Below, piece after piece: positions 38,937 to 53,941 of a stretch of 64,000 nucleotides of DNA; the stretch's first letter is position 1, and the number at the start of each line of letters is the position of its first letter. The position numbers were made by a program, and so were the translations under genes. The stretch lies in the IMG/VR virus record IMGVR_UViG_3300023257_000007, positions 186,001 through 250,000 of that record. One strand, 5' to 3'. A model generated the notes under the pieces. The model did not search any database, was not told the DNA's origin, and was given only the letters and a program-made list of their open reading frames with translations.

Positions 38937-38991
38937 AAAGGGCGGAGAATTTTTATAGGTTCTGGGAGAGTAGACTCCAACTTGCGATATA
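38937..38991 (+). ncRNA. Five-copy small RNA candidate, copy A
   Basis: AAGGGCGGAG...GAGAGTAGACTCCAACTTGCGATATA directly after a TATCTTTA promoter; no ORF follows. Confidence 0.6.
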
Positions 38992-39042
38992 TTTTTTTTA
39001 ACACAATTTTTATTTCTTAGAAGTAATCCGTATCTTTGTTAT

Positions 39043-39474
39043 ATGAAAATGAAAGTATTATATATTAAAGCTGAAAACATGAAAGATGGTGATTTTGACA
39101 TTATGTTAAAATTTGTTAATAATAATAAAAATTTAGATTATTATTTAACAGGTATAAATATGGGGGGTATTATGAGAACATTTATATGTATAGCCGTAAA
39201 TGATGATAATTATAATGAGGTTAAAGAAAAATTATTCTCTAAATATAATACACCATCACATATTACTGATTTTCAAAATTATGAAGATTATAAATATCCC
39301 TATTTATCAATTGAAATATCAATGGAAAATGAACATGCAGATCATTTAACTATTCATCCTTTGAATGATGATGATGTAGATGTTAAAAATTTTGAAATAA
39401 TTTATAGTAATATTGATGACATATTTGATGATATTGATATGCATATAACTACAAAAAAACTTGGTTTATCTTAA
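39043..39474 (+). CDS. KMGLL-tag variant protein
   Basis: Ends ITTKKLGLS. Confidence 0.75.
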   Translation: MKMKVLYIKAENMKDGDFDIMLKFVNNNKNLDYYLTGINMGGIMRTFICIAVNDDNYNEVKEKLFSKYNTPSHITDFQNYEDYKYPYLSIEISMENEHADHLTIHPLNDDDVDVKNFEIIYSNIDDIFDDIDMHITTKKLGLS

Positions 39475-39489
39475 CTAAAAAAAATAATT

Positions 39490-39810
39490 ATGAGAAAATT
39501 TAATTGTATTAAAATAGAAAATGAAGAACATTTAAATGAATGTTATAAAAAGATAATTGATCTTAAAACACATTATCCATATAACACTTTTGTTGATAGA
39601 TTTATTATGATAAAGGGTTATTGTATTGGTTTTGAAATAGAAGAAATAGAAGAAGGAAGATTAATTTTAACATTTTTAACTGATAATGATCTTCAACGAT
39701 TTGATGAATCAAATGAATTAGCTTTTAATTGTAATTATTTTAATGATATTGATTCTTTTGTTGAATATCATAAGATTTATTTTGATTGTAGATCATTAGG
39801 GGTTTTATAA
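39490..39810 (+). CDS. KMGLL-tag variant protein
   Basis: Ends FDCRSLGVL. Confidence 0.75.
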   Translation: MRKFNCIKIENEEHLNECYKKIIDLKTHYPYNTFVDRFIMIKGYCIGFEIEEIEEGRLILTFLTDNDLQRFDESNELAFNCNYFNDIDSFVEYHKIYFDCRSLGVL

Positions 39811-39811
39811 G

Positions 39812-39842
39812 AAAGTTTAGAAGGTATTCCGTATCTTTGTAT
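39812..39842 (+). promoter_or_regulatory. 31-bp repeated promoter unit, copy 4
   Basis: Identical core to copy 3; drives the SprT-like gene. Confidence 0.85.
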
Positions 39843-39863
39843 AAATATTAAAATAATATAATT

Positions 39864-40325
39864 ATGGAATTAGATAAAGCAAGAATAAAAATGAGAGAAT
39901 TGTTATCAAAACATGGTCTTGATAATTGGAGTTTTGATTTTGATAGAGCAGTTAGACGTTTAGGTCAATGTGTTTGGAAAAAGAATAGTATCATGACTCG
40001 AAAAATTACTATGTCTAGAATTATGACTGAAAGTAGAACTGATAAAGAAGTTATTAATACAATGTTACATGAAATAGCACACGCAATAGATTTTGAAACA
40101 AGGGGTAGAAGTGCTCATGATGATGTTTGGAGATCAATTGCATTGAGTATTGGTTGTGATGGTAATAGATCTAGTAATGTTGATGTTGAGGTTTCAGAAA
40201 AGAATTATAAGTGGTTGGCTATATGTCCAGAGCATGGTGTTTTGGGTGGATGGCAAAGAAAACCAAAAGATAATAAAATGTGTAAAAAATGTAAAAGTAA
40301 AATCATAATAAAGGAAAATAAATAA
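39864..40325 (+). CDS. SprT-like zinc metallopeptidase
   Basis: RRLGQC, TMLHEIAHA (HExxH), H...W...A..IGC, C-terminal Cys cluster. Confidence 0.88.
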   Translation: MELDKARIKMRELLSKHGLDNWSFDFDRAVRRLGQCVWKKNSIMTRKITMSRIMTESRTDKEVINTMLHEIAHAIDFETRGRSAHDDVWRSIALSIGCDGNRSSNVDVEVSEKNYKWLAICPEHGVLGGWQRKPKDNKMCKKCKSKIIIKENK

Positions 40326-40326
40326 C

Positions 40327-41154
40327 ATGAAAATAAAAGAAATAATAAGAAAAATATATGATAAAACCGGACATGGATATACTGCTACGGCTATTAGTGT
40401 TTTAAAAAAATCTGGTTTGATGGGTGATAAAACACATCAAAAGATTAAGAACATTGTTGAGAATGAAATTCAAAGATATGAAAAAGAATATTTTGAAAAA
40501 TATAAGTCTTATATTAGTGAGTATAGATATGAATCACCAACTATGATTTTATCAATAATGTATATTGATGGTTTTAAAGGAAAATATACTGATTCTTATA
40601 AGAAGATTCAGAAAGAGATTCAAAGAATTGACACATCAGAATTAAAGTCATATAAATCTTTAATAAAGAAAGCTAAATCTACTGATCATTTGCTAAGTAA
40701 GATATCCCATTATAAAAGAGCATTATCATTTCGAGGGGATAAAAAAATTGAAGAGAAATTGAAAGATTTAGAGGAGGATTTTCACTCAGATCAGATTATA
40801 GAGGATGAGAAGCAATTTTCAGAGAATACTATTCAATTAAAAGATTCCTCTATAATCAAAATTTATCTTGATCCGAATAACAGAAATACTTTGATGATGG
40901 AACAAGAACAAGAAGGTAAAAAAGGTTTTAGGTTAGTTAATCATTTTGCAGCTATACCACCATTGAAAGAAACTACTGACATATTTTGGATTGGTGAAAG
41001 AACTTCAAAAGCAACTGGTTATAAACATAATTCAGAGGCTTTAATAATAATGAGAGATGAAAATGATACAATAAGAATATATTATAAAGGAAGTTTATTA
41101 ATAGAAAATTATTGTGAAGAAGAATTAAAAAAAATTATAAATAAAATTAAATAA
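40327..41154 (+). CDS. Hypothetical protein
   Basis: 275-aa ORF. Confidence 0.8.
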   Translation: MKIKEIIRKIYDKTGHGYTATAISVLKKSGLMGDKTHQKIKNIVENEIQRYEKEYFEKYKSYISEYRYESPTMILSIMYIDGFKGKYTDSYKKIQKEIQRIDTSELKSYKSLIKKAKSTDHLLSKISHYKRALSFRGDKKIEEKLKDLEEDFHSDQIIEDEKQFSENTIQLKDSSIIKIYLDPNNRNTLMMEQEQEGKKGFRLVNHFAAIPPLKETTDIFWIGERTSKATGYKHNSEALIIMRDENDTIRIYYKGSLLIENYCEEELKKIINKIK

Positions 41155-41162
41155 AACAAATT

Positions 41163-41809: not shown

Positions 41810-41929
41810 AAAAATCACAAAGAAAACAAAACACAAGTATATTTTTTATTTAGGAAGGAAGTCCGTATATTTGTATAACAATAAAGAAAAATAATAATAT
41901 TAATTTAAAATCTATAGGAGGATATAAAA

Positions 41930-42166
41930 ATGGCAAGAGAAAAATTAGGTAAAGTAGTAGGACAAGTTGGTGGATTCAGAATCAGAATGGAAATGAAAAA
42001 TATCCAAAAAATTGAAACAGACAGATTTGGTAGAAGAAAAGTAACTGAATCTAAAAGATGTTTCACCGGAAAATACGGAGTTTACGCAGGTAGAAACCTT
42101 TGTAAAAATGGTCTAACCAAAGAAAAAGCAATTCAATACGCAAAATCGTATAACAAAGAAAATTAG
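41930..42166 (+). CDS. Small basic hypothetical protein
   Basis: Own promoter and AGGAGG SD. Confidence 0.8.
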   Translation: MAREKLGKVVGQVGGFRIRMEMKNIQKIETDRFGRRKVTESKRCFTGKYGVYAGRNLCKNGLTKEKAIQYAKSYNKEN

Positions 42167-42249
42167 AGCTCCCAGTTGGAGATTCGTTCCTCAAGGTTGA
42201 AAGGTCTTGAGGGACGTCTTAATTATAATAATAATTATTAAAAATATAT

Positions 42250-42322
42250 GTATCATTAGCTCAGTTGGTAGAGCTTCTGCCTTTTAAGCAGAAAGTCCAG
42301 GGTTCGAGTCCCCGATGGTATA
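42250..42322 (+). tRNA. tRNA-Lys(UUU)
   Basis: TAGCTCAGTTGGTAGAGC D arm; TCTGC-CTTTTAA-GCAGA; GGTTCGAGTCC. Confidence 0.9.
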
Positions 42323-42357
42323 CACAATGTAACCTCCTTTCACATTGAATTAGTACT

Positions 42358-42387
42358 TCCCCACCCGAACAGGTGGGGATTTTTTTT
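42358..42387 (+). terminator. Intrinsic terminator
   Basis: TCCCCACC/GGTGGGGA stem plus T tract. Confidence 0.85.
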
Positions 42388-42443
42388 ATTAGAAGGATTG
42401 TTGTATCTTTGTATTAGTATAAATTTTAAAAAAGGAGAAAAAA

Positions 42444-42599
42444 ATGAATGAATTAACAAAATTTATTGAATATTTAGAAAAAACTGATATTGAGGATTTT
42501 AAACATCCTGAACAGATTAAAGAATATATTATTGGTATATGTAAATCAATTAAAAAAGATATTATTGATTTTCATCCAATGATGGAGGATACGGAATAG
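42444..42599 (+). CDS. 51-aa microprotein (below the track cutoff)
   Basis: Promoter, AAGGAG, MNELTK...; leader duplicated at 42624-42678. Confidence 0.6.
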   Translation: MNELTKFIEYLEKTDIEDFKHPEQIKEYIIGICKSIKKDIIDFHPMMEDTE

Positions 42600-42665
42600 G
42601 GTTTTTTAAATCAGAACAAATTCCGTATCTTTGTATTAATATAAATTTTAAAAAAGGAGAAAAAA

Positions 42666-42767
42666 ATGAATGAATTAAACAAAATAGCAATAAATTTTAT
42701 AAATATTATAAACACAATTAGTATAGACGCATTTACATTATATATGTATATTGGGTTTTTCATATAG
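42666..42767 (+). CDS. 33-aa hydrophobic microprotein
   Basis: Same promoter/RBS/MNEL leader as 42444. Confidence 0.45.
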   Translation: MNELNKIAINFINIINTISIDAFTLYMYIGFFI

Positions 42768-42778
42768 GAGAAATTAAA

Positions 42779-43012
42779 ATGATAGTAAGTATAAGAATAA
42801 ATAACTGGGAAGATTATTTCAAAATTAAGAAATATCTAATATCACTCAATTTTAAGTGGTTTAGGACAACCTATAGCCCAAAATTTGATTTAATTATACA
42901 CTTATCAAGTGGTAAATTATCATATGATCCAAGAATGAATAAAAATGATAATTATGAATATGCTACTGTAAAAGAAATTATAAGTAAAGGATTCGGATCT
43001 TTTATTTTTTAG
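42779..43012 (+). CDS. Small protein with the family N-terminal fold but no tag
   Basis: IRINNWEDY..I..YLISLNFKW; ends GFGSFIF. Confidence 0.7.
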   Translation: MIVSIRINNWEDYFKIKKYLISLNFKWFRTTYSPKFDLIIHLSSGKLSYDPRMNKNDNYEYATVKEIISKGFGSFIF

Positions 43013-43035
43013 AAGATAATCCGTATATTTGTATT

Positions 43036-43611
43036 GACACAAGCAGAAACAGGATTGGTCGAATTGCCTGTGTTCTTCGGAACAAACTCGTTACCTATGC
43101 TTTTTTCCTAGAGGTTGGGCGAATTAATAACAATAAACTAGGCGCCGGACAATGCGATATTGTATGATTTTTAAGTAGTGAAATAAGAACTAACTTGGCT
43201 CTCTAACCAGATAGAGTGACTTTCGTAAGATGTTTGAAAGAAAACTATCTAGACTTTTATGTTTCAAGATAACCGGTAATGGAATTAAAAAGTTGCTAAC
43301 ACACAACGCGACAAGGCTTTGTCGCGTGAGATAGATATTCAAGGTAGGAGGTATTAGATACACCGTCTGGACTACAAGTTTGGAAATCAACAAAGTGGTG
43401 GGATGCGAGTGGTTGACCAGTGTTAGAATTAAAGAAGCAGGTTCGAATCCTGTGAATATGGATATAGAAAACAAAGGAGGGTTAATATTCGAGATAGAAT
43501 GGCTCTAGCTTCGGCAGAGTATCGCCTCAGAAATTAAATGAACGGCTATGCTAAATAGCTTCAGTACTTTAATCGAGAAGCCCAATAGGAAATTACTATT
43601 GGGCTTTTTTT
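43036..43611 (+). ncRNA. Large (~575 nt) structured non-coding RNA candidate
   Basis: Starts just after a TATATTTG promoter, ends at a strong terminator; GC-richer than flanks; C(UUCG)G hairpins, 9-bp ACGCGACAA/TTGTCGCGT stem, tRNA-like GCAGGTTCGAATCCTGT arm; no long plus-strand ORF. Confidence 0.7.
43578..43611 (+). terminator. Intrinsic terminator
   Basis: AAGCCCAATAG/CTATTGGGCTT 11-bp stem plus T tract. Confidence 0.9.
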
Positions 43612-43642
43612 ATTTGAATAATCTCCGTATATTTGTACTATC

Positions 43643-43696
43643 AAAAGGCGGAGTTTTAAAAGAACCCCGAAGAGTAGACTCCAATTTGCGTTATAT
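43643..43696 (+). ncRNA. Five-copy small RNA candidate, copy B
   Basis: AAAAGGCGGAG...GAAGAGTAGACTCCAATTTGCGTTATAT after a TATATTTG promoter. Confidence 0.6.
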
Positions 43697-43882
43697 ATTA
43701 TATAACATTTTTTAATTCAGAATATTATTAGTATCTTTGTATTATAAATATAAAATTAGAAATTATAATTACATATTTTTTCTCTTTGAAAAAATTGGGA
43801 GGAATTTTTAATTTAAGAAAAATTTCCGTATATTTGTAGTATTAAAATGTTTAGTATAAATTAAATAAAAAACTGAAAAAAT

Positions 43883-44527
43883 ATGGCAAAAGAAAAAAAG
43901 ATTGAAGAAAAAATAGTGGAAAAATTATTAACATCTAAGAAGAAATTAGAAACAGGCAAATGGCTTTATAGAGGATTTGTAGTTGAAAAAAATGGATCAA
44001 AATGGGTGGCTAAAGTTCACGAAGGTTCTAATATTGTTGAAGAAAAATCTGATTCTGTTGTTGATGAATTGATGACATCAGCTAAAAATATTTGTATTAG
44101 TATTGATAAGGTTTTAGGTGATTTAACAGATTCAGAAAAAACTAAACCGAAAAGAGCAATAAAATCAAAAGCATCAAGACTTAAAGATAAAGATGAAAAA
44201 GCTAAATATATTGAAAGAGCGCAAAGAGTAGCTTATGACATTAGAAATGGTTTACAAGTATTATCATTTCTTAATAAGAAAAAATTAAAAGATAATCTTT
44301 TAAGTGATGCTCCGAATATGAGAAAAACATTATCTAATGGTTATAGATTAGGATGGGAAAATGGTTGTTTATATAATGTACCAGAAATAACTGATGAAAT
44401 TAAAGCAATCATAGAAAAGGACAAAGAGTTTATTGAAGAATTAAAAGTGAAACATGAAGATTTAAACATATCATTTGGTATGGAAGATAATAAAATTGAT
44501 ATAGAAGTAACTTATAAAGAAAAATAA
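43883..44527 (+). CDS. Hypothetical protein
   Basis: 214 aa, own promoter and terminator. Confidence 0.8.
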   Translation: MAKEKKIEEKIVEKLLTSKKKLETGKWLYRGFVVEKNGSKWVAKVHEGSNIVEEKSDSVVDELMTSAKNICISIDKVLGDLTDSEKTKPKRAIKSKASRLKDKDEKAKYIERAQRVAYDIRNGLQVLSFLNKKKLKDNLLSDAPNMRKTLSNGYRLGWENGCLYNVPEITDEIKAIIEKDKEFIEELKVKHEDLNISFGMEDNKIDIEVTYKEK

Positions 44528-44545
44528 TCTCAATCTTTTTAATAT

Positions 44546-44575
44546 AAACCCCAGTTAATCGACTGGGGTTTTTTT
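44546..44575 (+). terminator. Intrinsic terminator
   Basis: AAACCCCAGT/ACTGGGGTTT plus T tract. Confidence 0.9.
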
Positions 44576-44634
44576 ATTTTAAATACTTTCCGTATATTTG
44601 TATAACGAAATTAATAATTAAAAAGGAGGAAAAA

Positions 44635-44997
44635 ATGACAACATTATTATTTATAAAAATATTAATAATTATAATGATTTTAGTAATGGGATTTATATCA
44701 GTTAGAATATGGGTTAAGCAAGTTAAATTGTTTAATAAGAGAAATAAAATGATTGCTGATAAAAAATTAAAAACTGAAAACTATATCAAAGAAAGAACTG
44801 AATTCTTTAAGAAAAATATTGATGAGTTTGAAATAGATGAAGTCGTTAAAGAAAAAGCATTTAACTTTGAAGCAATTATATTAGATAAAACAGCAAACAG
44901 TCTTTTTGTTCACACAAAGAAAAGAAAACCAGAAGGAACTGATTGTACAGGATGGTTTTCTATTGATGATTTCAACAGAAGATTTAAAAAACAATAA
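44635..44997 (+). CDS. Membrane-anchored hypothetical protein
   Basis: N-terminal TM; AGGAGG SD. Confidence 0.8.
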   Translation: MTTLLFIKILIIIMILVMGFISVRIWVKQVKLFNKRNKMIADKKLKTENYIKERTEFFKKNIDEFEIDEVVKEKAFNFEAIILDKTANSLFVHTKKRKPEGTDCTGWFSIDDFNRRFKKQ

Positions 44998-45080
44998 TAA
45001 TAATTAAAATTAAAACTAGAAACTATGAAAAATTATGAAATTGAAGATGATAGAGTAATGTTCTAAAAACATTGAAACAT

Positions 45081-45152
45081 GGTCCGTTCGTCTATTGCGA
45101 AGGACGTTGGGTTTTCAGCCCAGAAAGAGGGGTTCGATTCCCCTACGGACTA
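45081..45152 (+). tRNA. tRNA-Glu(UUC)
   Basis: GGTCCGT/ACGGACT acceptor; TTGGG-TTTTCAG-CCCAG; GGTTCGATTCC. Confidence 0.9.
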
Positions 45153-45159
45153 CTAAATT

Positions 45160-45243
45160 GGGTAGGTATGCAAGAGGCTAAAGCAGGCGGTCTGTAAAAC
45201 CGTTACGTAAGATCTACCGGTGGTTCAAATCCATCTCTACCCA
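45160..45243 (+). tRNA. tRNA-Tyr(GUA)
   Basis: GGGTAGG/TCTACCC; GCGGT-CTGTAAA-ACCGT; long variable arm. Confidence 0.9.
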
Positions 45244-45250
45244 CACATAT

Positions 45251-45326
45251 CTAGATGTTCCTCCAGCCAGGCATAGGGGCGTGACTTGGACTCACGTGTT
45301 CACAGGTTCGAATCCTGTCATTTAGA
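45251..45326 (+). tRNA. tRNA-Pro(UGG)
   Basis: C1-G72 and A73; CGTGA-CTTGGAC-TCACG; ACAGG-TTCGAAT-CCTGT; atypical D arm and A37. Confidence 0.8.
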
Positions 45327-45335
45327 CTAAAATAT

Positions 45336-45409
45336 TGTGATGTAGCTCAGCTAGGTAGAGCACCAGATTGAAGATCTGGGTGTCGGTGGTTCAAATCCAT
45401 CTATCACAA
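45336..45409 (+). tRNA. tRNA-Phe(GAA)
   Basis: CCAGA-TTGAAGA-TCTGG; standard D and T arms. Confidence 0.9.
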
Positions 45410-45415
45410 CAAAAT

Positions 45416-45490
45416 GCCTTTATGATGTAAAGGATAGCATAAAAGTTTTCTAAACTTTTCGTCTAGGTTCGAATCCTAGTAAGGGTACCA
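45416..45490 (+). tRNA. tRNA-Arg(UCU), CCA encoded
   Basis: AAAGT-TTTCTAA-ACTTT; CTAGG-TTCGAAT-CCTAG; ends ACCA. Confidence 0.9.
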
Positions 45491-45599
45491 ATATCAAAAT
45501 AAATTACAAATTATTGAATACTATTTTTAGTTTAAGAAAAATATTCGTATATTTGTATTATAATTAAATTAAAAATTAAACTAATAGGAGGAAAATAAA

Positions 45600-45752
45600 A
45601 TGGCAATTAAAAGATGTACTTGTAAAAATGAATTTCAAGATGAGAAATATGGTAAAGGAAAAAGAGTATTTACTCAATCTAGCGTACCTAAAGAAGGTGG
45701 AACCGCAAAAGAAGGTAAATCAAGATGTACTGTATGTGGATCAACAAAATAA
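45600..45752 (+). CDS. 50-aa zinc-ribbon microprotein (below the track cutoff)
   Basis: MAIKRCTCKNEFQD..YGKGKRV...RCTVCGSTK; own promoter and AGGAGG SD. Confidence 0.75.
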   Translation: MAIKRCTCKNEFQDEKYGKGKRVFTQSSVPKEGGTAKEGKSRCTVCGSTK

Positions 45753-46917: not shown

Positions 46918-47184
46918 ATGGCACGTAAAATAAATTGGAATAAAAATAAAGCTAAATCAGAAATTAAAAAAAATGTAGAAATTGTATCTGAAAAGAAAAC
47001 TATTAAATTTGCTTATAAAATTGGATTAATCAAACGAAAAGGTGGTATAACATCTTATAACGCAATTGATAAAGACGCAATGGAAACCAAAGTATTGGAA
47101 ATAATGGAAAAAGATAATTATAAGAAAATCCTAGTTTTAAACAATAAAACCAGAGAACGTAAAGTATATTTATCAGAATTATAA
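46918..47184 (+). CDS. Basic hypothetical protein
   Basis: Start MARKINW at 46918 after AGGAGG. Confidence 0.75.
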   Translation: MARKINWNKNKAKSEIKKNVEIVSEKKTIKFAYKIGLIKRKGGITSYNAIDKDAMETKVLEIMEKDNYKKILVLNNKTRERKVYLSEL

Positions 47185-47282
47185 TTATAATATAATTTTT
47201 TACCTGGAATATTATCCGTATATTTATATCAACAAACAACAATTAAATTATTTATTAACTAACATTAAAACAAAAAATTAAA

Positions 47283-47495
47283 ATGCCAAACATCAAAAAA
47301 TGTAAAATAGGAGAATTTGTACAAATCATCACTAATGGACAAGCGAACCGTAGAGGTCGTATAGTATCTAAAACAGAGAAACGAGTTTATTGTTTCATCA
47401 TGGAAGGTGGAAAATATTTACGTGACGAGAATGGTCGTGAAAAACGTTTTTTAGTTAACCCTACAAACATTAAGTTTTACAACTCAGCAGAGTAA
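47283..47495 (+). CDS. Small KOW/SH3-like basic protein
   Basis: KIGEFVQII..G....RGRIV; followed by terminator. Confidence 0.7.
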   Translation: MPNIKKCKIGEFVQIITNGQANRRGRIVSKTEKRVYCFIMEGGKYLRDENGREKRFLVNPTNIKFYNSAE

Positions 47496-47505
47496 AAGAA
47501 AAAAG

Positions 47506-47533
47506 AGAACCTCCATTTAATTGGAGGTTCTTT
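47506..47533 (+). terminator. Intrinsic terminator / hairpin
   Basis: GAACCTCCA/TGGAGGTTC stem. Confidence 0.7.
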
Positions 47534-47537
47534 ACAT

Positions 47538-47608
47538 TGACCCATGGTATAATGGTAGTATACCTGCCTTTGAAGTAGGTGGTTTTGGTTCGAATCCTGA
47601 TAGGTCAA
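47538..47608 (+). tRNA. tRNA-Gln(UUG)
   Basis: CCTGC-CTTTGAA-GTAGG; U1-A72; weak T stem. Confidence 0.8.
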
Positions 47609-47997
47609 CAATTATTAACTTTAAAAAATTTAAAATATGGATATTTGTATAATAATAATATCACTTTTATTTATATTATGTAACGTTTTTGTTTTAGGAT
47701 ATTATTTTGAAAGAAATAAATCTAAAAAGGTGTCTTATTACAAATGTTTTATTGAGTGTTTAGAATTGTTTAAATATTTTTAACCCGAAAAACCATAGTT
47801 CGTTTTTTATACACCTAATTAATAACATGAAACAAAATGTGGGTACAAACCTTATATAATAAAAGATATGGGTGGTTATGATAAAGACTTTGTTGAAAAA
47901 GAATTTGAAAACTTTAAAAATATTTTTTAATTAAGAAACAAAATCGTATATTTGTTCTATAATAGAAAATGAAAGATATAAGAATCCAAAAATATAT

Positions 47998-48069
47998 TGC
48001 GAGGTGGAGCAGGGGTAGCTCGCTAGGCTCATAACCTAGAGGCCGTCGGTTCAAATCCGACTCTCGCTA
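47998..48069 (+). tRNA. tRNA-Met(CAU), initiator-like
   Basis: GTGGAGCAG..GGTAGCTCG..GGCTCATAACC; 1-72 mismatch; only two consecutive G-C pairs at the bottom of the anticodon stem. Confidence 0.85.
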
Positions 48070-48128
48070 CTAAGTAGGTCTATATGGCTTACCGAATATG
48101 TCTCTTAACACTACGGTGTTCAAAAGGA

Positions 48129-48151
48129 AAAGCCCGATAAGGGCTTTTTTT
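48129..48151 (+). terminator. Intrinsic terminator
   Basis: AAAGCCC-GATAA-GGGCTTT plus T tract. Confidence 0.85.
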
Positions 48152-48204
48152 ATTGGAATATATTCCGTATATTTGTATAGTTAAAATAAAAAGTAAAAAG
48201 TATT

Positions 48205-49188
48205 ATGGAAAGAAAATTAGCAACAATAGCAAAAATTAATGACATCAACCCTATTAAAGGAGCTGATGTAATTGAAGTAGCTACTATTCGAGGATGGAAA
48301 GTTGTAGTTAAAAAAGATGAATTCAAAATTGGAGATCTTTGTGTGTATTGTGAAATAGACTCAGTTATGCCTCCAAAAGAAGAATTTAAATTCCTAGAAA
48401 ATAAAAAATATAGGATTAAAACTATTAAACTCAGAGGACAAGTATCTCAAGGTATAGCATTTCCATTGTCTATTTTACCATTAGGTTGGCACTCAATTAT
48501 AGATCAAGATGTAACAGAACTTCTTGAAGTAATTAAATGGGAACCAGTAATACCAGCTTGTTTAGCAGGTAAAATAAAAGGTCTTTTTCCTTCTCATTCT
48601 CTAAAAACAGATGAAGAAAGAATACAAAATCTTATTGAAGAATTTCCTAATTTAAAAACTAAAACATATATAGCAACAGAAAAACTTGATGGTTCTTCTG
48701 CAACATTTTATCTTAAAGATAATATATTTGGTGTATGTTCTAGAAACTTAGATATATTAGAAGATGATACTAATTCATTTTGGAAAGTAGCAAGAGAATT
48801 GAAAATCGAAGAATTAATGAGAGAAAATGGTCTTGATAATTATAACCTCCAAGGAGAACTTATTGGAGAAGGTATACAAAAAAACAAATATAAAATCAAA
48901 GGACAAACAGTAAGATTCTTTAGAATGTTTAATATTAAAACACATTCATTTATAAATTATAGTGACTTTATTTTATTAATTAAAGCAATGGAATTACAAA
49001 CTGTTCCTATTGTAGAAGTTAATTTAGAACTACCTGAAACAATAGATGAACTTCTTAAATATGCTGAAGGATTATCAAAACTTAATAAAAATATACAAAG
49101 AGAAGGTATTGTCTTTGTAGCTGAAGAAACAGAAGATAGAGAATCATTTAAAGTAATATCAAATAAATTTTTATTGAAAAATGAATAA
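48205..49188 (+). CDS. RNA ligase, Rnl2/DRB0094 family with N-terminal OB domain
   Basis: ERKLATI..I..I.PI.GAD.IE, EKLDGSS motif I, QGELIG.GIQ.N.Y, REGIVF, SFKVISN.FLLK. Confidence 0.93.
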   Translation: MERKLATIAKINDINPIKGADVIEVATIRGWKVVVKKDEFKIGDLCVYCEIDSVMPPKEEFKFLENKKYRIKTIKLRGQVSQGIAFPLSILPLGWHSIIDQDVTELLEVIKWEPVIPACLAGKIKGLFPSHSLKTDEERIQNLIEEFPNLKTKTYIATEKLDGSSATFYLKDNIFGVCSRNLDILEDDTNSFWKVARELKIEELMRENGLDNYNLQGELIGEGIQKNKYKIKGQTVRFFRMFNIKTHSFINYSDFILLIKAMELQTVPIVEVNLELPETIDELLKYAEGLSKLNKNIQREGIVFVAEETEDRESFKVISNKFLLKNE

Positions 49189-49375
49189 AGAACTAGAATT
49201 AACAGGAAAACAAGTAAAACTCATATCAATGGATGACCCTTATACTAAATTGAAAAATGGAGATAAAGGTATAATAATCTTTGTCGATGATATAGGTCAA
49301 ATACATGTACAATGGGACAATGGATCATCACTTGCATTAATACCAGGTGAAGATAAGTATGAAATATTAGATTGA
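49181..49375 (+). CDS. DUF4314-like protein
   Basis: V.L..MDDPY..L..GDKG....VDDIGQIHV.WDNGSSLALIPGED. Confidence 0.85.
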   Translation: MNKELELTGKQVKLISMDDPYTKLKNGDKGIIIFVDDIGQIHVQWDNGSSLALIPGEDKYEILD

Positions 49376-49521
49376 TGGAACTTCCAGAAATGGGCGCTAT
49401 TTCGAGCATAAGATGTGAATTGCCCTGATATCTCTGCAGACAAACCCCTATAAGGGGAGAGAAAATTAGCATTCTTCCATCATTTTTAATCTTTGAATAA
49501 TTTCCATATCTTTACATAAGT

Positions 49522-49574
49522 AAAGGGCGGGAATTTTTTAGGTTCTGGAAGAGTAGACTCTAATTTATGATATA
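49522..49574 (+). ncRNA. Five-copy small RNA candidate, copy C
   Basis: AAAGGGCGGGAA...GGAAGAGTAGACTCTAATTTATGATATA after a TATCTTTA promoter. Confidence 0.55.
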
Positions 49575-49640
49575 TTCACCCCAATTTTTTATATTCAATA
49601 ATTATCCGTATATTTATACAAAATTAAAAAACCTAAAGAA

Positions 49641-49827
49641 ATGAAAAAAAAAATATTTAACACAAAAATTAGAAGAATTAACAACTCGGACTTATAAATA
49701 TAAAAGGACTAAACTTGATGTAATTATGTTTAAACTTAAAGAAGCATTAAGTAATGATGAATTGGCAGATCTATTAGAAATCAGATTAGTAGATATTTTA
49801 GAAGGACAGAAATTGGGTCTATTGTAA
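49641..49827 (+). pseudogene. KMGLL-tag gene frameshifted in an A10 run
   Basis: Removing one A gives MKKKYLTQKL...ILEGQKLGLL; may be a sequencing error. Confidence 0.65.
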
Positions 49828-49884
49828 TTTTTAATTCTTGAAAGATATCCTTATCTTTGTATAAACAATTAAAGATAAAATATC

Positions 49885-50076
49885 ATGGCAAAAAGAAAAA
49901 GAAAAAGAACAAAAAAAATCAAAGAATTTAAAATAACTTTAGATGACTTTCTAAAAGCTAATCGTATAGGATCTAGAGAGGCAGAATTAGAACAAAATGG
50001 AACTGGTTGGAAATCTAATCGAAAAGCATATAAAAATAAAAAATCATATTCACGCAAAGATAAACACAGAAATTAA
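49885..50076 (+). CDS. Small basic protein, ArfA-like ribosome rescue factor candidate
   Basis: ITLDDFLKANR..SRE.E; C-terminal KNKKSYSRKDKH resembles ArfA KNKKGKGSY.RKGKH. Confidence 0.5.
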   Translation: MAKRKRKRTKKIKEFKITLDDFLKANRIGSREAELEQNGTGWKSNRKAYKNKKSYSRKDKHRN

Positions 50077-50278
50077 TGGAATTCAATCAATTATCATATC
50101 AAATAATAGTTACGATGAATTAATGGAAGAACTTAAAGGTTTTATTGATTTTAAAGAAAATGATAGTTTACGACCGAATATCGTGACTATAAACAAGATT
50201 TTAAAGCAACATGGGATCATTATGAAGTTTATAAACGTAAAGTTATATGGGATAGTAATGATTATATATTTAATATGA
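50076..50278 (+). other. Short hypothetical ORF region, start uncertain
   Basis: 3' part of track ORF 49997..50278; its 5' part overlaps 49885..50076. Confidence 0.3.
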
Positions 50279-50345
50279 ATGAACAGTCTATTAAAGAAAT
50301 AATTAATAAAATTAAAGAAATAATACCATATAAATTAAAACTATT

Positions 50346-50672
50346 ATGATTAAACTATTAGCAATAAAAATATATTCTAAAACAAGATTATTACAAATAT
50401 TAGATGATCTTAAAAAGAACTATAATATACATAAAACATACAATAATGATTGGGTAGGTTTTAAAGGTATAAGAGAAGGTGGTATATTTGTATATATCAA
50501 TATTGAATCAAATATAAAGTTATATGGTTGGGATTATATTTACAAAGATTATGATAAGGAATATGTACCAAGTACTATCAGCAATGGTTTAAAACACAAA
50601 ACATTAATAATAATAGATAACGATTTACCAATATCAGCAATAATAGAATCAAATAAATTTAACTTAATATAA
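50346..50672 (+). CDS. KMGLL-tag variant, subfamily F
   Basis: WVGF..I..GG.FVY like 62663; ends IESNKFNLI. Confidence 0.8.
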   Translation: MIKLLAIKIYSKTRLLQILDDLKKNYNIHKTYNNDWVGFKGIREGGIFVYINIESNIKLYGWDYIYKDYDKEYVPSTISNGLKHKTLIIIDNDLPISAIIESNKFNLI

Positions 50673-50685
50673 AAAAGGAGACAAA

Positions 50686-50964
50686 ATGATTGAAACTAAA
50701 ACAAAAGAATTAGTAATAAATAAAACAACTATTAAGAAATCATTAATAATTCATGAATGTAAAAGATGTGGAAATACACACCTAATACATATTGAATATG
50801 AGATTGAAAACATAGATACATCTTGGGAAGAAGAAATGATTGCATTCTCTGATGGTTATTGGTGTGAAAAATGTAATCATGTTATAAGTGAAGATGAAAA
50901 TCATACTTCCACTTATGTTATTACTTCATCTACAAATGATGATTTTGATATAAGAAAAATATAA
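50686..50964 (+). CDS. Zinc-finger hypothetical protein
   Basis: CKRCG ... CEKCN. Confidence 0.75.
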   Translation: MIETKTKELVINKTTIKKSLIIHECKRCGNTHLIHIEYEIENIDTSWEEEMIAFSDGYWCEKCNHVISEDENHTSTYVITSSTNDDFDIRKI

Positions 50965-50965
50965 T

Positions 50966-51049
50966 GCCAAAATGGCGAAATAGGTAGACGCGCCAGGTTT
51001 AGAACCTGGTGTCCATTAGGACGTGTGGGTTCGAGTCCCACCTTTGGTA
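50966..51049 (+). tRNA. tRNA-Leu(UAG)
   Basis: TGGCGAAATAGGTAGACGC; CCAGG-TTTAGAA-CCTGG; long variable arm; GGTTCGAGTCC. Confidence 0.92.
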
Positions 51050-51065
51050 CAAAATAATTAAAAAT

Positions 51066-51380: not shown

Positions 51381-51437
51381 AAATATAACATTTAAACTTT
51401 TTATTCCAGAATAATCTCCGTATATTTGTACTATAAT

Positions 51438-51490
51438 AAAGGCTGAGAGATTAAACTCCCCCAGAAGAGTAGACTCCAACTTGCGTTATA
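51438..51490 (+). ncRNA. Five-copy small RNA candidate, copy D
   Basis: AAAGGCTGAGAG...GAAGAGTAGACTCCAACTTGCGTTATA after a TATATTTG promoter. Confidence 0.6.
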
Positions 51491-51528
51491 TCCCCGCACA
51501 CAAGAATAATATATACCAATAAACAGAT

Positions 51529-51567
51529 TCGTGATTCGACTGCTTGCGTCAAAGCCTCGAATCACGA
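51529..51567. repeat. GC-rich hairpin
   Basis: TCGTGATTCGA/TCGAATCACGA 11-bp stem with inner GCTT/AAGC stem. Confidence 0.85.
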
Positions 51568-51801
51568 TCATGTTGATATATCTAAGTTACATGTTTAAAT
51601 TCAATTTTATTACATTTAAGTTTTTTTACCTGAAAAAAATCCGTATATTTGTATAACAAGATTGGAAATAATCTTACACTTTTCTTGAAAATTTCAAGAA
51701 ATAAAACTTTAAAAATATTTTTAATGTAAGAAAAATTTCACTATATTTGTATATAACAATTAAGAAAAATTATTTATTAACCTTTTAAAACCTTAAAGAC
51801 T

Positions 51802-52110
51802 ATGGCAAACAGAAAAGACCTTATCAATGGTATCGCATCAGCGACCGGTAAAACAAAAAAAGATTCTAAAATCGCTTTAGAAGCAATGCTTTCAATTATG
51901 AAAAAAGAATTAGGCGATGGCGGAGAAATTAAACTTGTAAATTTTGGTACCTTTAAAATCGTAGCAAGAAAAGCTCGAAAAGGAAGAAATCCTAGAACAG
52001 GTGAATCAATCAACATTCCTGCAAAGAATGTAGTTAAATTTAAAGCTGGTAAAGGCCTTAAAGAAGCGGCTGATTACACAGCAGAAGAAAGAGCTGAATT
52101 AGGACTATAA
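51802..52110 (+). CDS. hup: HU family DNA-binding protein, copy 3 (diverged)
   Basis: HU motifs; tail DYTAEERAELGL. Confidence 0.95.
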   Translation: MANRKDLINGIASATGKTKKDSKIALEAMLSIMKKELGDGGEIKLVNFGTFKIVARKARKGRNPRTGESINIPAKNVVKFKAGKGLKEAADYTAEERAELGL

Positions 52111-52129
52111 ACCTAATAATTCTATAATA

Positions 52130-52157
52130 AAAAGAGGATTTATTAATCCTCTTTTTT
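52130..52157 (+). terminator. Intrinsic terminator
   Basis: AAAAGAGGATT/AATCCTCTTTT. Confidence 0.85.
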
Positions 52158-52172
52158 ATTGCGATAAACACT

Positions 52173-52191
52173 ATTTAGATTTAGTCTAAAT
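52173..52191. promoter_or_regulatory. ATTTAGA-N5-TCTAAAT operator-like palindrome (Fur-box-like)
   Basis: Perfect 7-5-7 inverted repeat; related sites at 53953 and 54293. Confidence 0.45.
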
Positions 52192-52329
52192 AAAAATAAT
52201 AATTCAAATTATTATATTAAGAAGATTATCCCTATATTTAATAAATAAATTAAAAAATTATGCAAAAAGTAGAAATAATATTAAGTGTGGTGGATATGGA
52301 TTGTTTCATTAAAAATAATAATAACAATT

Positions 52330-52962
52330 ATGATTAAAATAGGAGAAAAGAAAATAATACATAAAGATTGTATATACTTTGAAAATAGTATATGTTTTGG
52401 AGATGGCGATACATATAGTACCGTTAAATATGAAATACCTAACAATGAAGTAGGACACAATACAATTTTACTTGCATTATTCTTAGGATATTATGATGAA
52501 TATTCAGATGGAGGTATAAAAAATCTACCAAATTGGATTCAAGATGAATTAAAAACATTAGACCTTCTAATTCTAAATAGATGGAATATAAATAAAAAAA
52601 CAAATGTTAAAGATACAGATGAAAGAGAACTTATGTATATCTTTAATGATTCTGAAGAACATTCAGGATATTTTGGTTGGGTTGATGGTACAGATATATA
52701 TTATTATGATAAAGATGGTGTATCACATGATATTGAAATATTTGGTATATCATTCGATAAACAAACTAATCATACAGCAATAGATATAATGCTTAATATA
52801 TATGCATGGTTTCTAAGTAAGTGCAAAGAAATAACAATGGAAAAATTTAAAGACTTAGTAAGATTTGAATATAGAGTAAAATTCAAGGAAATAATAGAGG
52901 ACAAACCCGAACTAAAAGACCTTAAAATTAAAATAGAAGCCGCTAACCTTGGCTTATTATAA
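52330..52962 (+). CDS. KMGLL-tag protein, GDAD/YYYD family
   Basis: FGDGD, YYYDKDGVSHDIEI; ends IEAANLGLL. Confidence 0.8.
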   Translation: MIKIGEKKIIHKDCIYFENSICFGDGDTYSTVKYEIPNNEVGHNTILLALFLGYYDEYSDGGIKNLPNWIQDELKTLDLLILNRWNINKKTNVKDTDERELMYIFNDSEEHSGYFGWVDGTDIYYYDKDGVSHDIEIFGISFDKQTNHTAIDIMLNIYAWFLSKCKEITMEKFKDLVRFEYRVKFKEIIEDKPELKDLKIKIEAANLGLL

Positions 52963-53014
52963 TATTGGTTTGCCATAACTCCAAGTTATCTGAAAATGTA
53001 CAATGAGTAGGCAC

Positions 53015-53043
53015 AACCCCACCTTTAAAGGTGGGGTTTTTTT
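53015..53043 (+). terminator. Intrinsic terminator
   Basis: AACCCCACCTT/AAGGTGGGGTT plus T tract. Confidence 0.85.
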
Positions 53044-53363
53044 ATTTAGAAGAATTTCCTTACCTTTATTTAAATTAAAAAGAAAAAATTATGTTAGAAT
53101 ATACAAAAAATGGAGTAATTATAAGTGGTCAATTTCATTCACTTGAGAGCATCATCAGAAAAGTAAACCAAATGAAGAAATTGATGAACTAACAAAGAAA
53201 TGGAAAGTATGAAAAAAGAATATGAACATACGAGAAATTAACAAATTTGGACCAACACTAATTAAATAAAGAAATGTAATTTTTTAATTAAACAAATTTA
53301 CTATTGTAAAATATAAATCATAATATTTGATATGTTAATCGGTTAAAAAACAAATTAAAAATT

Positions 53364-53825
53364 ATGATTTTAACAATAATTATTACAACCTTAGCAAGCG
53401 TATTATCAACTTTGGTGGTTGGCTATTTTATATGGTCAGGTATTAGGGCACGTAAGTTAAATCAAAAGGTCAAGGATAATACATTAAGTATTACACAAAA
53501 TGAAAGATATTGTCAAGATGCAGATGATTCACTTAGTGAATCTATAGATGAAGTGAATATTCGTGTTGATAATAATGTAAATGAATTAAGTGAAAGAATT
53601 CATTCTATGTATGGTCAGAATTCAGATAATAGAGATGAATTAGATAGAAAAATTCATAAAGAATTAGATAAAAGATTTGATAAAGTTTGGCAAACAATTC
53701 AAAATAATTCTTTATTCCAAAAGTATAATATTATAACTGCGTCGGGAAATATTGATTCAGATAAAGTTACAAAACTTGCTATTGAGAATGATGGTGAAGC
53801 CGTGAAAGATGAAGAAATAAAATAA
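53364..53825 (+). CDS. Membrane-anchored coiled-coil protein
   Basis: N-terminal TM helix. Confidence 0.8.
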   Translation: MILTIIITTLASVLSTLVVGYFIWSGIRARKLNQKVKDNTLSITQNERYCQDADDSLSESIDEVNIRVDNNVNELSERIHSMYGQNSDNRDELDRKIHKELDKRFDKVWQTIQNNSLFQKYNIITASGNIDSDKVTKLAIENDGEAVKDEEIK

Positions 53826-53894
53826 GAAATATAACTGATTAACAATCAAATATTTTTTATATTAGAAGAAAATCCGTATCTTTATACTATTAAA

Positions 53895-53941
53895 AAAGGC
53901 TGAGGATTTAAACTTCCCTAGAAGAGTAGACTTCAACATGC
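53895..53941 (+). ncRNA. Five-copy small RNA candidate, copy E
   Basis: AAAGGCTGAGGA...GAAGAGTAGACTTCAACATGC after a TATCTTTA promoter. Confidence 0.55.

What the first reader, a model, noticed from the sequence alone, without database searches (positions are those of the whole stretch)
38937..53941. Five dispersed, individually promoted copies of a ~55-nt RNA motif
Seen at 38937, 43643, 49522, 51438 and 53895: AAGG(G)C[GT]G[AG]-variable ~18 nt-G[AG]AGAGTAGACT[CT][CT]AA[CTA]..G. Each starts about 6-14 nt after its own TA[TC]nTTT[GA] promoter, and no ORF follows before the next promoter. The variable part keeps a hairpin despite sequence change (A: AGAATT/GGTTCT; C: GGAATT/GGTTCT; B: GGAGTT/AACCCC; E: GAGG/CTTC; D: GAG/CTC), which is covariation-like. 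Inference: a multicopy early sRNA, e.g. a protein sponge, a type III antitoxin-like decoy or an RNA anti-CRISPR. The reverse complement of the core (GTTGGAGTCTACTCT) faintly resembles type VI-B repeat starts, but this is weak.
Basis: partly seen in the sequence, partly recalled or inferred. Interest (0 to 1): 0.8.

Follow-up and report, generated by a model that had tools for sequence, protein, structure and literature searches.

The report
Multicopy small RNA of Bacteroidota phages
The five repeats are real and belong to a large, apparently undescribed family of small non-coding RNAs that phages of Bacteroidota carry in several copies each; every copy has its own promoter, a freely varying hairpin and a near-invariant AGRGUAGACUCCRAC motif, and its molecular partner is still unknown.

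Summary
There are five + strand copies and no others, each 3-12 nt downstream of its own Bacteroidota-type promoter.

The window is part of a 348-kb, 24% G+C jumbo-phage contig. The element is not private to it. A covariance model finds 125 copies (97 distinct) in over 50 viral contigs. Copies also occur in the cultured Tenacibaculum phage Larrie and in Cellulophaga phages phiST, phi19:2 and phi13:1, always unannotated. There are usually 3-8 copies per phage.

Anatomy: promoter (three types), optional 5' hairpin, GGG box, variable hairpin P2 with compensatory changes, then a hairpin whose 5' strand (AGRGUAG) and 8-nt loop (ACUCCRNC) are near-invariant, often followed by a U-run.

More copies lie opposite to the neighbouring genes (53) than co-directional (35). 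This favours stand-alone RNA genes over leaders or operators.

Rfam, the literature, CRISPR-array scans and target searches found nothing.

Best reading: sibling trans-acting sRNAs that recognise a conserved partner through the C-rich loop. Base-pairing is slightly favoured over protein titration. The function is inferred, not shown.

The anti-CRISPR and ToxI ideas are not supported.

The parts
38919..38931 (+). Promoter of copy A (Bacteroidota -7 box, CCGTATCTTTACA)
   Evidence: pattern found 31 times, 0.87 expected; sequence
38934..38997 (+). sRNA copy A. GGG box 38940-38942; P2 AGAATT/GGTTCT 38946-38963; conserved AGAGTAGACTCCAAC 38967-38981; then TTGC and a T8 run
   Evidence: 55.2 bits, E 6e-14
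43625..43637 (+). Promoter of copy B (CCGTATATTTGTA), directly after a strong terminator at 43575-43609
43640..43700 (+). sRNA copy B. Core GAGTAGACTCCAAT at 43672-43685; P2 GGAGTT/AACCCC
   Evidence: 50.3 bits
49504..49516 (+). Promoter of copy C (CCATATCTTTACA)
49519..49579 (+). sRNA copy C. Core GAGTAGACTCTAAT at 49551-49564 (loop variant CUCU); P2 GGAATT/GGTTCT
   Evidence: 44.3 bits
51418..51430 (+). Promoter of copy D (CCGTATATTTGTA)
51434..51495 (+). sRNA copy D. Core GAGTAGACTCCAAC at 51467-51480; P2 CTG-GAG/CTC-CAG
   Evidence: 43.7 bits
53874..53886 (+). Promoter of copy E (CCGTATCTTTATA)
53891..53952 (+). sRNA copy E. Core GAGTAGACTTCAAC at 53924-53937 (loop variant CUUC); P2 GAGG/CTTC
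   Evidence: 43.2 bits

Best explanation
The five elements are paralogous stand-alone genes for a roughly 55-90-nt non-coding RNA. They belong to a widespread family in phages of Bacteroidota.

Shown: each copy has its own promoter. The RNA has a GGG box, then a hairpin (P2) whose sequence is free but whose pairing is kept. After P2 comes a second hairpin, which in many phages is the intrinsic terminator. Its 5' strand AGRGUAG and its 8-nt loop ACUCCRNC are almost invariant across unrelated phages.

Inferred: the RNAs act in trans as 'sibling' sRNAs. The exposed C-rich loop, perhaps with the adjoining 5' strand, is the recognition module. It most likely base-pairs or kisses a G-rich site (complement GUYGGAGU) in a strongly conserved host or phage RNA. 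The several copies give a rapid, high dose from host-type promoters, and P2 and the leaders diverge freely, which would also limit recombination between copies. The target is unknown. Titration of a conserved RNA-binding protein by the same motif is nearly as likely.
For: Family and copy number. The covariance model finds 125 hits (97 distinct) in 69 sources, up to 8 distinct copies per contig. Cultured phages carry copies in unannotated intergenic DNA: Tenacibaculum phage Larrie and Cellulophaga phages phiST, phi19:2 and phi13:1.

Own promoter. 85 of 97 copies have a sense TAnnTTTR box 25-91 nt upstream, against 18 of 97 control positions. Most of the remaining 12 use one of two other promoter types and a few a variant -7 box, with the RNA unchanged.

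RNA-level selection. The P2 closing pair is CG 58, UA 31, UG 3, other 5. 0 of 500 shuffles reach the covariation score, and slid controls fall to 0.09-0.17 against 0.33. There are 81 distinct P2 sequences, 91% of which form at least 4 bp.

Stand-alone genes. 53 of 97 copies lie opposite to the local coding strand and 35 are co-directional. 44 of 97 have a T5+ run. L026 and Larrie were read directly.

Invariance tested without bias. With the stem strands fixed and the loop left free, all 21 distinct copies read ACUCC(AA/GA/GC/AG)C. With the 3' flank fixed and the 11-nt core left free, the changes fall on positions 1, 2, 5 and 6. G3, U4 and A7-C11 are constant, leaving aside the two insertion copies noted below.

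The common changes are transitions that a fixed pairing partner would tolerate: A2->G, C10/C11->U and R12.

Multicopy seed-sharing sRNAs are known in Bacteroides (FopS, PMC11697453).
Against: No target was found. Complementarity in the window is no more than chance, and there is no consistent site in start regions of neighbouring gene families. Host genomes could be scanned only partly and showed no shared context.

GGAG-type sites are depleted upstream of genes in these phages: 9 of 659 against 32 of 659 controls. They are rare in Bacteroidia (PMC9976891).

A plain loop seed does not explain why the 5' strand of a stem is invariant. Predicted ensembles show no single dominant fold for the core.

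One phage carries a 30-nt insertion between U9 and C10 of the motif. This rules out a contiguous 14-nt seed and fits a structured junction or a protein site as well.

No transcript data exist: no RNA run was listed. The window copies lack clear terminators.
Confidence: 0.35

Rival explanations
1. Protein decoy or sponge. The invariant AGRGUAG-ACUCCRNC hairpin is a high-affinity site for a conserved host or phage RNA-binding protein. The several copies supply stoichiometric amounts early in infection, as CsrB, 6S, VA and EBER RNAs do.
For: Both the stem strand and the loop are sequence-invariant, while the 3' strand changes register: CUAC/CUGC pairs with GUAG, and ACGUCUA pairs with UAGAC. A 30-nt two-hairpin insertion inside the motif is tolerated in one phage. 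Copy number is high and the rest of the RNA varies freely. No RNA target was found.
Against: No candidate protein emerged. The only protein family shared between the window and other sRNA loci is a SprT-like metalloprotease, which has no known RNA-binding role. A near-invariant stretch of more than 12 nt is long for a protein site. The transition-only changes fit pairing equally well.
Confidence: 0.27
2. RNA anti-CRISPR. The RNA is a decoy or anti-repeat for a Bacteroidota CRISPR system. Type VI-B/Cas13b is the best candidate: its repeats start GUUG and end CAAC, and the motif resembles the 3' half of such a repeat, and so the complement of its 5' half.
For: The RNA is solitary, promoter-driven and phage-borne. 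Larrie variants share GAAGGGUA...(C)CAAC with the Flavobacterium columnare and F. branchiophilum 36-nt repeats. Type VI-B and this RNA family are both confined to Bacteroidota (the former from my own knowledge).
Against: No array has a repeat starting GTTGGAGTCTAC or ending GTAGACTCCAAC in 241 million metagenome records. No multi-hit, array-like locus appeared in the viral or (partial) genome scans. VI-B repeats differ between species, whereas the RNA motif is the same in phages from many environments. The 5' half of a repeat (GUUG...CCCUU) is absent, so it cannot mimic a whole repeat.
Confidence: 0.06
3. Cis-acting leader. The RNA is a put/nut-like or ops-like element that modifies the RNA polymerase which transcribed it (processive antitermination), or a 5' stabiliser for downstream early genes.
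For: In the window all five copies are co-directional with the genes, sit just after promoters and lack strong terminators. Many P2 loops are GNRA or GACAA-type, like boxB hairpins (the boxB comparison is from my own knowledge).
Against: 53 of 97 copies point against the neighbouring genes. 44 of 97 are followed at once by a T5+ run (L026 and Larrie read). In the window, copies A to D are followed by a further promoter before the next gene. P2 loops are not conserved, even within one phage.
Confidence: 0.07
4. DNA-level element. Either a PeSL-like mobile promoter/stem-loop cassette that serves recombination and insulation in the hyperplastic early region, or an operator for a DNA-binding protein (GAGT-AG-ACTC is a near-palindrome).
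For: The region is packed with repeated promoter and terminator cassettes and with paralogous small genes. This matches the PeSL regions of T4-like phages (PMC2839356, PMC4122927). Eight of the ten central bases are palindromic.
Against: The motif is conserved across unrelated phages behind three promoter types, always in one orientation to the promoter. P2 keeps its pairing while its sequence changes. The common A2->G change breaks the DNA palindrome but keeps an RNA G-U pair. Within a genome only about 17-19 nt are shared, which is short for homologous recombination.
Confidence: 0.08

Closest known systems
FopS/GibS family of paralogous sRNAs of Bacteroides (PMC11697453)
   Same: A multicopy sRNA family of 12-15 copies in Bacteroidota. 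Each copy has its own promoter and shares a conserved recognition sequence with the others, while the rest varies. One copy was seen in a phage. The RNAs act in trans by base-pairing and bind the RRM protein RbpB.
   Different: FopS is chromosomal. Its conserved seed is a single-stranded 5' stretch ahead of a terminator, whereas here the conserved part is the 5' strand and loop of the 3' hairpin. No Rfam family matched our element even at E <= 10; whether the FopS model is in this Rfam copy was not verified. No sequence match was found in the paper text.
UCCC/C-rich-loop sRNAs of Firmicutes (S. aureus RNAIII hairpins 7, 13 and 14, Rsa RNAs; Listeria LhrC1-5; streptococcal csRNAs) - from my own knowledge
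   Same: The recognition sequence is a C-rich motif displayed in hairpin loops, including the terminator loop. Several of these are sibling families of about five copies.
   Different: Those loops pair with Shine-Dalgarno sequences. Bacteroidota and these phages hardly use SD (PMC9976891). The loop here has five invariant bases plus an invariant stem strand.
PeSL promoter/stem-loop cassettes of T4-like phages (PMC2839356, PMC4122927)
   Same: Dozens of repeated early promoter plus stem-loop units lie between small ORFan genes in the hyperplastic regions of large lytic phages. The window's roughly 28 CCGTATMTTTGTA promoters with upstream terminators look like this.
   Different: PeSLs are regulatory and recombination DNA cassettes placed before ORFs. 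The element here is an extra transcribed unit with a motif conserved across unrelated phages and promoter types, and it is often antisense to its neighbours.
RNA anti-CRISPRs (Racr, solitary repeat units) - from my own knowledge of Camara-Wilpert et al. 2023
   Same: Short, promoter-driven, phage-borne non-coding RNAs, sometimes in several copies.
   Different: Racrs are recognisably similar to the host's CRISPR repeat. No such repeat was found for this motif.
Viral multicopy decoy RNAs (adenovirus VA, EBV EBER, herpesvirus saimiri HSURs) and T4 stable RNAs C and D - from my own knowledge
   Same: Abundant small virus-encoded RNAs in 2-7 copies that bind a conserved host protein or RNA. The T4 RNAs of unknown function lie among tRNA genes, as the copies do here.
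   Different: There is no sequence or structural relation. The likeness is by analogy only.

Membership tests
Any Rfam 15 family | Score at or above the family's gathering threshold, or at least a suggestive E-value | tested here: not met
   Only tRNAs passed gathering in the window. In E-value mode up to 10, nothing overlaps the five copies or three canonical copies in L048.
RNA anti-CRISPR / solitary CRISPR repeat unit | Close sequence and structure similarity to a CRISPR repeat used by hosts | tested here: not met
   No array with repeats starting GTTGGAGTCTAC or ending GTAGACTCCAAC in the metagenome scan; the two hits are a coding repeat. All viral and genome hits were single, not arrays. 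Only GAAGGGTA..CAAC is shared with Flavobacterium VI-B repeats.
RNA anti-CRISPR / solitary CRISPR repeat unit | Binds the Cas effector or processing enzyme and blocks interference | not testable with these tools
   Needs biochemistry or genetics.
Type III antitoxin (ToxI-like) | Tandem direct repeats of about 34-36 nt | tested here: not met
   The copies are 1.9-5.9 kb apart in the window and dispersed in other phages.
Type III antitoxin (ToxI-like) | Adjacent or host ToxN/AbiQ-type endoribonuclease gene whose site the RNA carries | tested here: inconclusive
   The neighbouring window ORFs that were scanned gave no such family. Hosts could not be examined.
FopS/GibS sRNAs | Conserved R1 seed in a single-stranded 5' region followed by a terminator; matches the deposited Rfam model | tested here: not met
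   The conserved part lies in the 3' hairpin. No Rfam hit. The motif is absent from the paper's text. Whether the FopS model is in this Rfam copy was not verified.
Sibling (paralogous) trans-acting sRNAs, as a functional class | Several independently transcribed paralogues sharing one recognition sequence | tested here: met
   Five copies in the window and up to 8 per contig, each with a promoter. The motif is shared and the rest varies.
Sibling (paralogous) trans-acting sRNAs, as a functional class | Demonstrated discrete transcripts and targets | not testable with these tools
   No RNA run was listed. No target was found in silico.
PeSL cassettes | Repeated early promoter plus stem-loop in hyperplastic regions, immediately upstream of ORFans | tested here: inconclusive
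   Promoter plus hairpin repeats are present. However, the element is not directly upstream of an ORF, is often antisense to its neighbours and is conserved between unrelated phages.
nut/put-type processive antitermination RNA | Lies between a promoter and the operon it controls, co-directional, upstream of terminators that are read through | tested here: not met
   53 of 97 copies are opposite to the local coding strand. The convergent arrangement was read in L026 and Larrie.

The most novel reading that the evidence does not exclude
The RNA is a phylum-wide, RNA-based takeover or counter-defence device. Its invariant hairpin would neutralise or reprogramme a component peculiar to Bacteroidota. 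Candidates are an RNA-guided or RNA-cleaving defence (Cas13b-type) or the unusual translation-initiation apparatus. A possible partner is the SprT-like protease gene that sits next to a copy in several phages. This would be the first conserved sRNA 'tool' shared by otherwise unrelated lytic phages, from 77-kb Cbastvirus to 350-630-kb jumbo phages.
Probability: 0.12. Interest if true: 0.85.

Novelty: new variant of a known kind. Interest (0 to 1): 0.62.

Why it matters
Phage-encoded regulatory RNAs are poorly known, and almost nothing is known for phages of Bacteroidota, a dominant group in oceans, lakes and guts.

This is a sequence-defined RNA family with the following features:
- It is shared by very different phages.
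- It is present in 3-8 copies per genome.
- It is missing from Rfam and from genome annotations.
- It occurs in cultured phage-host pairs (Cellulophaga baltica with phiST, Tenacibaculum with Larrie), so its function can be tested directly.

The extreme conservation of a 5-nt loop core and a 7-nt stem strand, against a freely evolving background, implies a conserved partner worth finding. The covariance model also gives an annotation tool, and a marker for phages that infect Bacteroidota.

Tried and rejected
1. Anticodon-loop mimic. The window variants CCA, CUA and UCA look like Trp, amber and opal anticodons flanked by U and A. A scan with the triplet left free gave only CCA (25) and CCG (8) in real members. 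Rejected.

2. CRISPR repeat. No cognate array was found.

3. Host copy or host target. All Bacteroidota genome hits lie in unrelated ORFs, except L145, a 6.7-kb contig that carries several copies and is probably phage DNA.

4. Targets in the phage. Complementary 8-10-mers in the window are at chance level. Duplex energies with start regions of co-located gene families are no better than background.

5. Block of the host rpsU extended SD, or mimicry of the 16S 3' tail. The loop offers only CUCC (4 nt), against the 13-bp SD-ASD helix described for rpsU. The phages themselves avoid SD. Not supported.

6. 5S rRNA loop E, 23S and 16S look-alikes (AGAGUAG, AGACUCC), recalled from memory. These are 7-mers at chance level and were not pursued.

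7. RNAalifold on a MAFFT alignment gave only a trivial 3-bp hairpin, because P2 is misaligned. A hand-given structure and the covariance model were used instead.

8. Literature searches by sequence. The only exact 14-mer match is a synthetic GAGUA reference hairpin used in chemical mapping, which is a coincidence.

9. RNA-seq. No RNA run holds the window.

10. Self-dimer through GAGUAGACUC (-10.4 kcal/mol). Possible, but untested.

Full report
**1. The observation**

The five sites were read directly. All carry, on the + strand:
- a Bacteroidota-type -7 box (CCGTATMTTTRYA);
- 3-12 nt later, AAAGG(G)C;
- a short AU-rich hairpin;
- GAAGAGTAGACT(C/T)(C/T)AA(C/T).

GAGTAGACTYYAA matches exactly five times, at 38968, 43672, 49551, 51467 and 53924. 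From base composition I estimate fewer than 0.01 such matches by chance. A covariance model trained on the wider family scores the five at 43-55 bits and nothing else above 14.5 bits, so there are exactly five copies.

The promoter box occurs about 31 times against 0.87 expected. Almost all are on the + strand between 31 and 54 kb. Only five of these roughly 28 promoters carry the motif. No ORF of 35 aa or more starts between a motif and the next promoter or gene.

The window is 24% G+C and has nine tRNA genes interleaved with the copies. Positions 41858-46491 are identical to IMGVR_UViG_3300023257_000007, a 348-kb viral contig. DNA runs that hold it come from salt-lake and marine metagenomes. 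No RNA run was listed.

**2. It is a large family**

About 45 of them show the same architecture as the window copies. Further scans and the model R1 gave 125 hits (97 distinct sequences) in 69 sources from over 50 contigs of 4 kb to 348 kb. Some of these contigs are near-duplicates of one another. Many contigs have 3-8 distinct copies in the parts fetched.

BLAST against GenBank phages found the element in:
- Tenacibaculum phage Larrie;
- Cellulophaga phages phiST, phi19:2 and phi13:1 (genus Cbastvirus);
- a 634-kb uncultured phage.

It lies under no annotated feature in any of them; the record of the uncultured phage carries no annotation at all.

In the part of the bacterial genome collection that was scanned, the only family member is on a 6.7-kb Bacteroidales MAG contig that carries several copies and is probably phage DNA. 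All other Bacteroidota hits are chance matches inside unrelated ORFs.

**3. Anatomy**

*(a) Promoter.* 85 of 97 copies have a sense TAnnTTTR box 25-91 nt (median 42) upstream of the core, against 18 of 97 control positions. Most of the other 12 use one of two different promoter types (…TTGTAACTTTTTGAA…ATCGTTATAC… and …GTGCTATACAC…), and a few have a variant -7 box. The RNA, not the promoter, is therefore the conserved unit.

*(b) Optional 5' hairpin.* This is absent in the window copies.

*(c) GGG box.*

*(d) Hairpin P2.* There are 81 distinct sequences among 93 examined, and 91% can form at least 4 bp.
- The closing pair is C-G in 58, U-A in 31, U-G in 3 and unpaired in 5 of 97.
- 0 of 500 column shuffles reach the observed covariation score.
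- Sliding the partner by one to three columns drops paired cells from 78% to 41-54%, and the covariation score from 0.33 to 0.08-0.17.

*(e) The conserved block.* It reads R-R-A-G-R-G-U-A-G-A-C-U-C-C-R-N-C.

*(f) The 3' strand of the second hairpin (P3).* Either CUAC/CUGC(CUU) pairs with (A)G(R)GUAG, or ACGUCUA pairs with UAGAC. Both give an 8-nt loop. With G at position 2 the helix is 7 bp long and is followed by UAUAUUUUUU, which is a plausible intrinsic terminator.

*(g) U-run.* A T5+ run follows in 44 of 97 copies. The GGG box can pair instead with the CCU(U) that follows. In Larrie copy 1 this P1 helix is 7 bp, ATTCGGG/CCCGAAT. Either a three-way junction or a long terminator hairpin with a free 5' end is therefore possible.

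**4. Invariance tested without ascertainment bias**

The first scans fixed the core, so I ran two scans that left it free.
- Stem strands and tail fixed, 8 loop positions free: all 21 distinct hits are family members. Their loops read ACUCCAAC (14), ACUCCGAC (3), ACUCCGCC (3) and ACUCCAGC (1).
- 3' flank fixed, 11 core positions free: 12 copies have GAGTAGACTCC. The others are GGG-, AAG- and AGG- starts, TATAC (G6 to U) and TGGAC (A5 to G).
- G3, U4 and A7-C11 never change, leaving aside the two insertion copies. There were three chance hits (in L274, L279 and L280).

One phage (L281, L286) carries a 30-nt, two-hairpin insertion between U9 and C10 in both of its copies. GAGUAGACU and CUCCAAC are both kept.

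The loop core ACUCC and much of the 5' stem strand are thus under strong sequence constraint. The two halves can, however, be separated.

**5. What the context says**

53 of 97 copies lie on the strand opposite to the local coding strand, 35 are co-directional and 7 are mixed.

In L026 five copies sit in intergenic gaps of a minus-strand gene array. In Larrie they are divergent from one gene and convergent with the next, and they end before a bidirectional terminator. This is what stand-alone RNA genes look like. It argues against a 5' leader, a nut/put-like antiterminator or an operator.

In the window all five are co-directional, and no canonical terminator follows them. Strong terminators do exist elsewhere, for example at 43575-43609 just before promoter B. 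Copy A has a T8 run. Discrete 3' ends in this particular phage remain unproven. The five RNAs are thermodynamically unremarkable (z +0.09 to -1.29).

The only protein family shared between the window and other sRNA loci is a SprT-like metalloprotease. It was found in 11 contigs (window 39864-40322) and lies directly beside a copy in about six of them. Because the loci are centred on the RNA, this linkage is only suggestive.

**6. Searches for an identity**

- Rfam 15 gave nothing at gathering thresholds or at E <= 10.
- Full-text sequence searches gave only chance matches, including a synthetic GAGUA reference hairpin.
- CRISPR: no array-like multiple hits in the viral or genome scans. A metagenome scan for two 12-mers 45-62 nt apart, which covers both orientations, found only a coding repeat. 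Published Flavobacterium repeats (PMC5395568, Table 4) share only GAAGGGTA…CAAC with the minority GGG variant. VI-B repeats differ between species, whereas the phage motif does not.
- Anticodon mimicry was rejected.
- Targets were not found in the window or in neighbouring genes.
- SD-like sites are depleted in these phages. The only strong SD known in Flavobacterium, on rpsU, pairs with 13 nt of the 16S tail (PMC13000457), of which the loop could cover four.

**7. Interpretation**

Shown:
- a family of independently promoted, structured, non-coding RNA genes carried in several copies by phages of Bacteroidota;
- a variable hairpin with compensatory change;
- a sequence-invariant hairpin module.

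Inferred: they act in trans through that module on a conserved partner.

I favour base-pairing or kissing by the C-rich loop (0.35), for these reasons:
- Sibling sRNAs with a shared seed are the commonest known kind, including FopS in Bacteroides.
- C-rich loops in terminator hairpins are classic seeds.
- The tolerated changes are wobble-compatible transitions.

Protein titration (0.27) explains the invariant stem strand and the tolerated insertion better.

The remaining rivals are a cis leader or antiterminator (0.07), a PeSL-like or operator DNA element (0.08) and an RNA anti-CRISPR (0.06). The rest of the probability is for mechanisms not thought of.

**8. Novelty and verdict**

The element is real, non-random and RNA-level. 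It belongs to a family that I could not find in Rfam, in annotations or in the literature searched. It is a new variant of a known kind, phage-encoded or sibling sRNAs, and it is unusual in three ways:
- it is dispersed in many copies within lytic phage genomes;
- it is conserved across unrelated phages and promoter types;
- its conserved part is a hairpin strand plus loop.

The function remains unknown. Cultured hosts and phages make it directly testable.

Noticed in passing
window 43021-43612 (+): A promoter-to-terminator unit of about 570 nt with no ORF of 35 aa or more that starts with ATG on the + strand. It contains a tRNA T-arm-like GCAGGTTCGAATCCTGT (about 43437-43455) and ends in a strong terminator (43575-43609). 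No Rfam or ARAGORN hit. Fold z-score only -1.5. It may be a larger non-coding or tRNA-like RNA.
   Followed up: partly
window 31400-54000 (+): About 28 near-identical host-type promoters (CCGTATMTTTGTA), several just after strong terminators, between many small ORFs. This is a PeSL-like hyperplastic early region. Several ATG codons lie only 3-5 nt after the box (31441, 38247, 38598, 39043), suggesting leaderless mRNAs. Others have AGGAGG-type SDs, which is unusual for Bacteroidota.
   Followed up: partly
window 37855-38169, 45725-46159, 51802-52110; also 32415-33366, 34243-35325, 58180-58992: Families of paralogous small genes, including three copies (72-91% identical) of a PHROG-379 'DNA binding protein' and several tandem triplets. 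These indicate repeated duplication in this region.
   Followed up: no
window 39864-40322 (+); L008, L015, L021, L090, L109, L246: A SprT-like metalloprotease gene is the only protein family shared between the window and other sRNA-bearing loci. It lies directly beside an sRNA copy (130-490 nt away, often divergent) in about six phages.
   Followed up: partly
window 51527-51571 (+), just after copy D: A 13-bp inverted repeat (GATTCGTGATTCGA...TCGAATCACGATC) with no following T-run, in an ORF-free stretch before promoter 51641.
   Followed up: no
window 53948-53962, 53995-54008, 54290-54304; L035, L048, L094: The motif TTCTTATTTAGA/TTCTTATTTACA recurs downstream of copy E. (C)TTATTTAGAAT also follows sRNA copies in other phages. 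It may be a second promoter class or a protein-binding site.
   Followed up: no
L267 (phage Larrie) 3990-4060, 4630-4690, 5860-5920, 6490-6545, 6840-7050: Every intergenic region carries repeats of TGTTAAAATTTTGTTAAAA / CTTTAACATTTCTTTAACA near the promoters. This is probably a phage regulator's binding site.
   Followed up: no
L267 4116-4186 (+) and about 4200-4275 (-): Two sRNA copies face each other about 50 nt apart (cores GGGTAGACTCCACC and GGGTAGACTCCGTC). Read-through would give complementary RNAs.
   Followed up: no
L281 10100-10190 (+), L286 (-) (IMGVR_UViG_3300042520_001767): Both copies in this phage have a 30-nt insertion with two small hairpins (GCC-GCCA-GGC and GAACC-AAA-GGUUC) between U9 and C10 of the motif.
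   Followed up: partly
window 42250-51050 and 48205-49188: Nine tRNA genes (Lys, Glu, Tyr, Pro, Phe, Arg, Gln, Met, Leu) and an RNA ligase gene lie among the sRNA copies, which suggests a tRNA supply or repair module. A thymidylate synthase gene is on the other arm (21940-23112).
   Followed up: no
window about 28000-31000: GC skew changes sign and the coding strand switches (minus-strand large genes at 3-28 kb, plus-strand small genes from 31 kb). This marks a divergent transcription point or an origin-like region.
   Followed up: no
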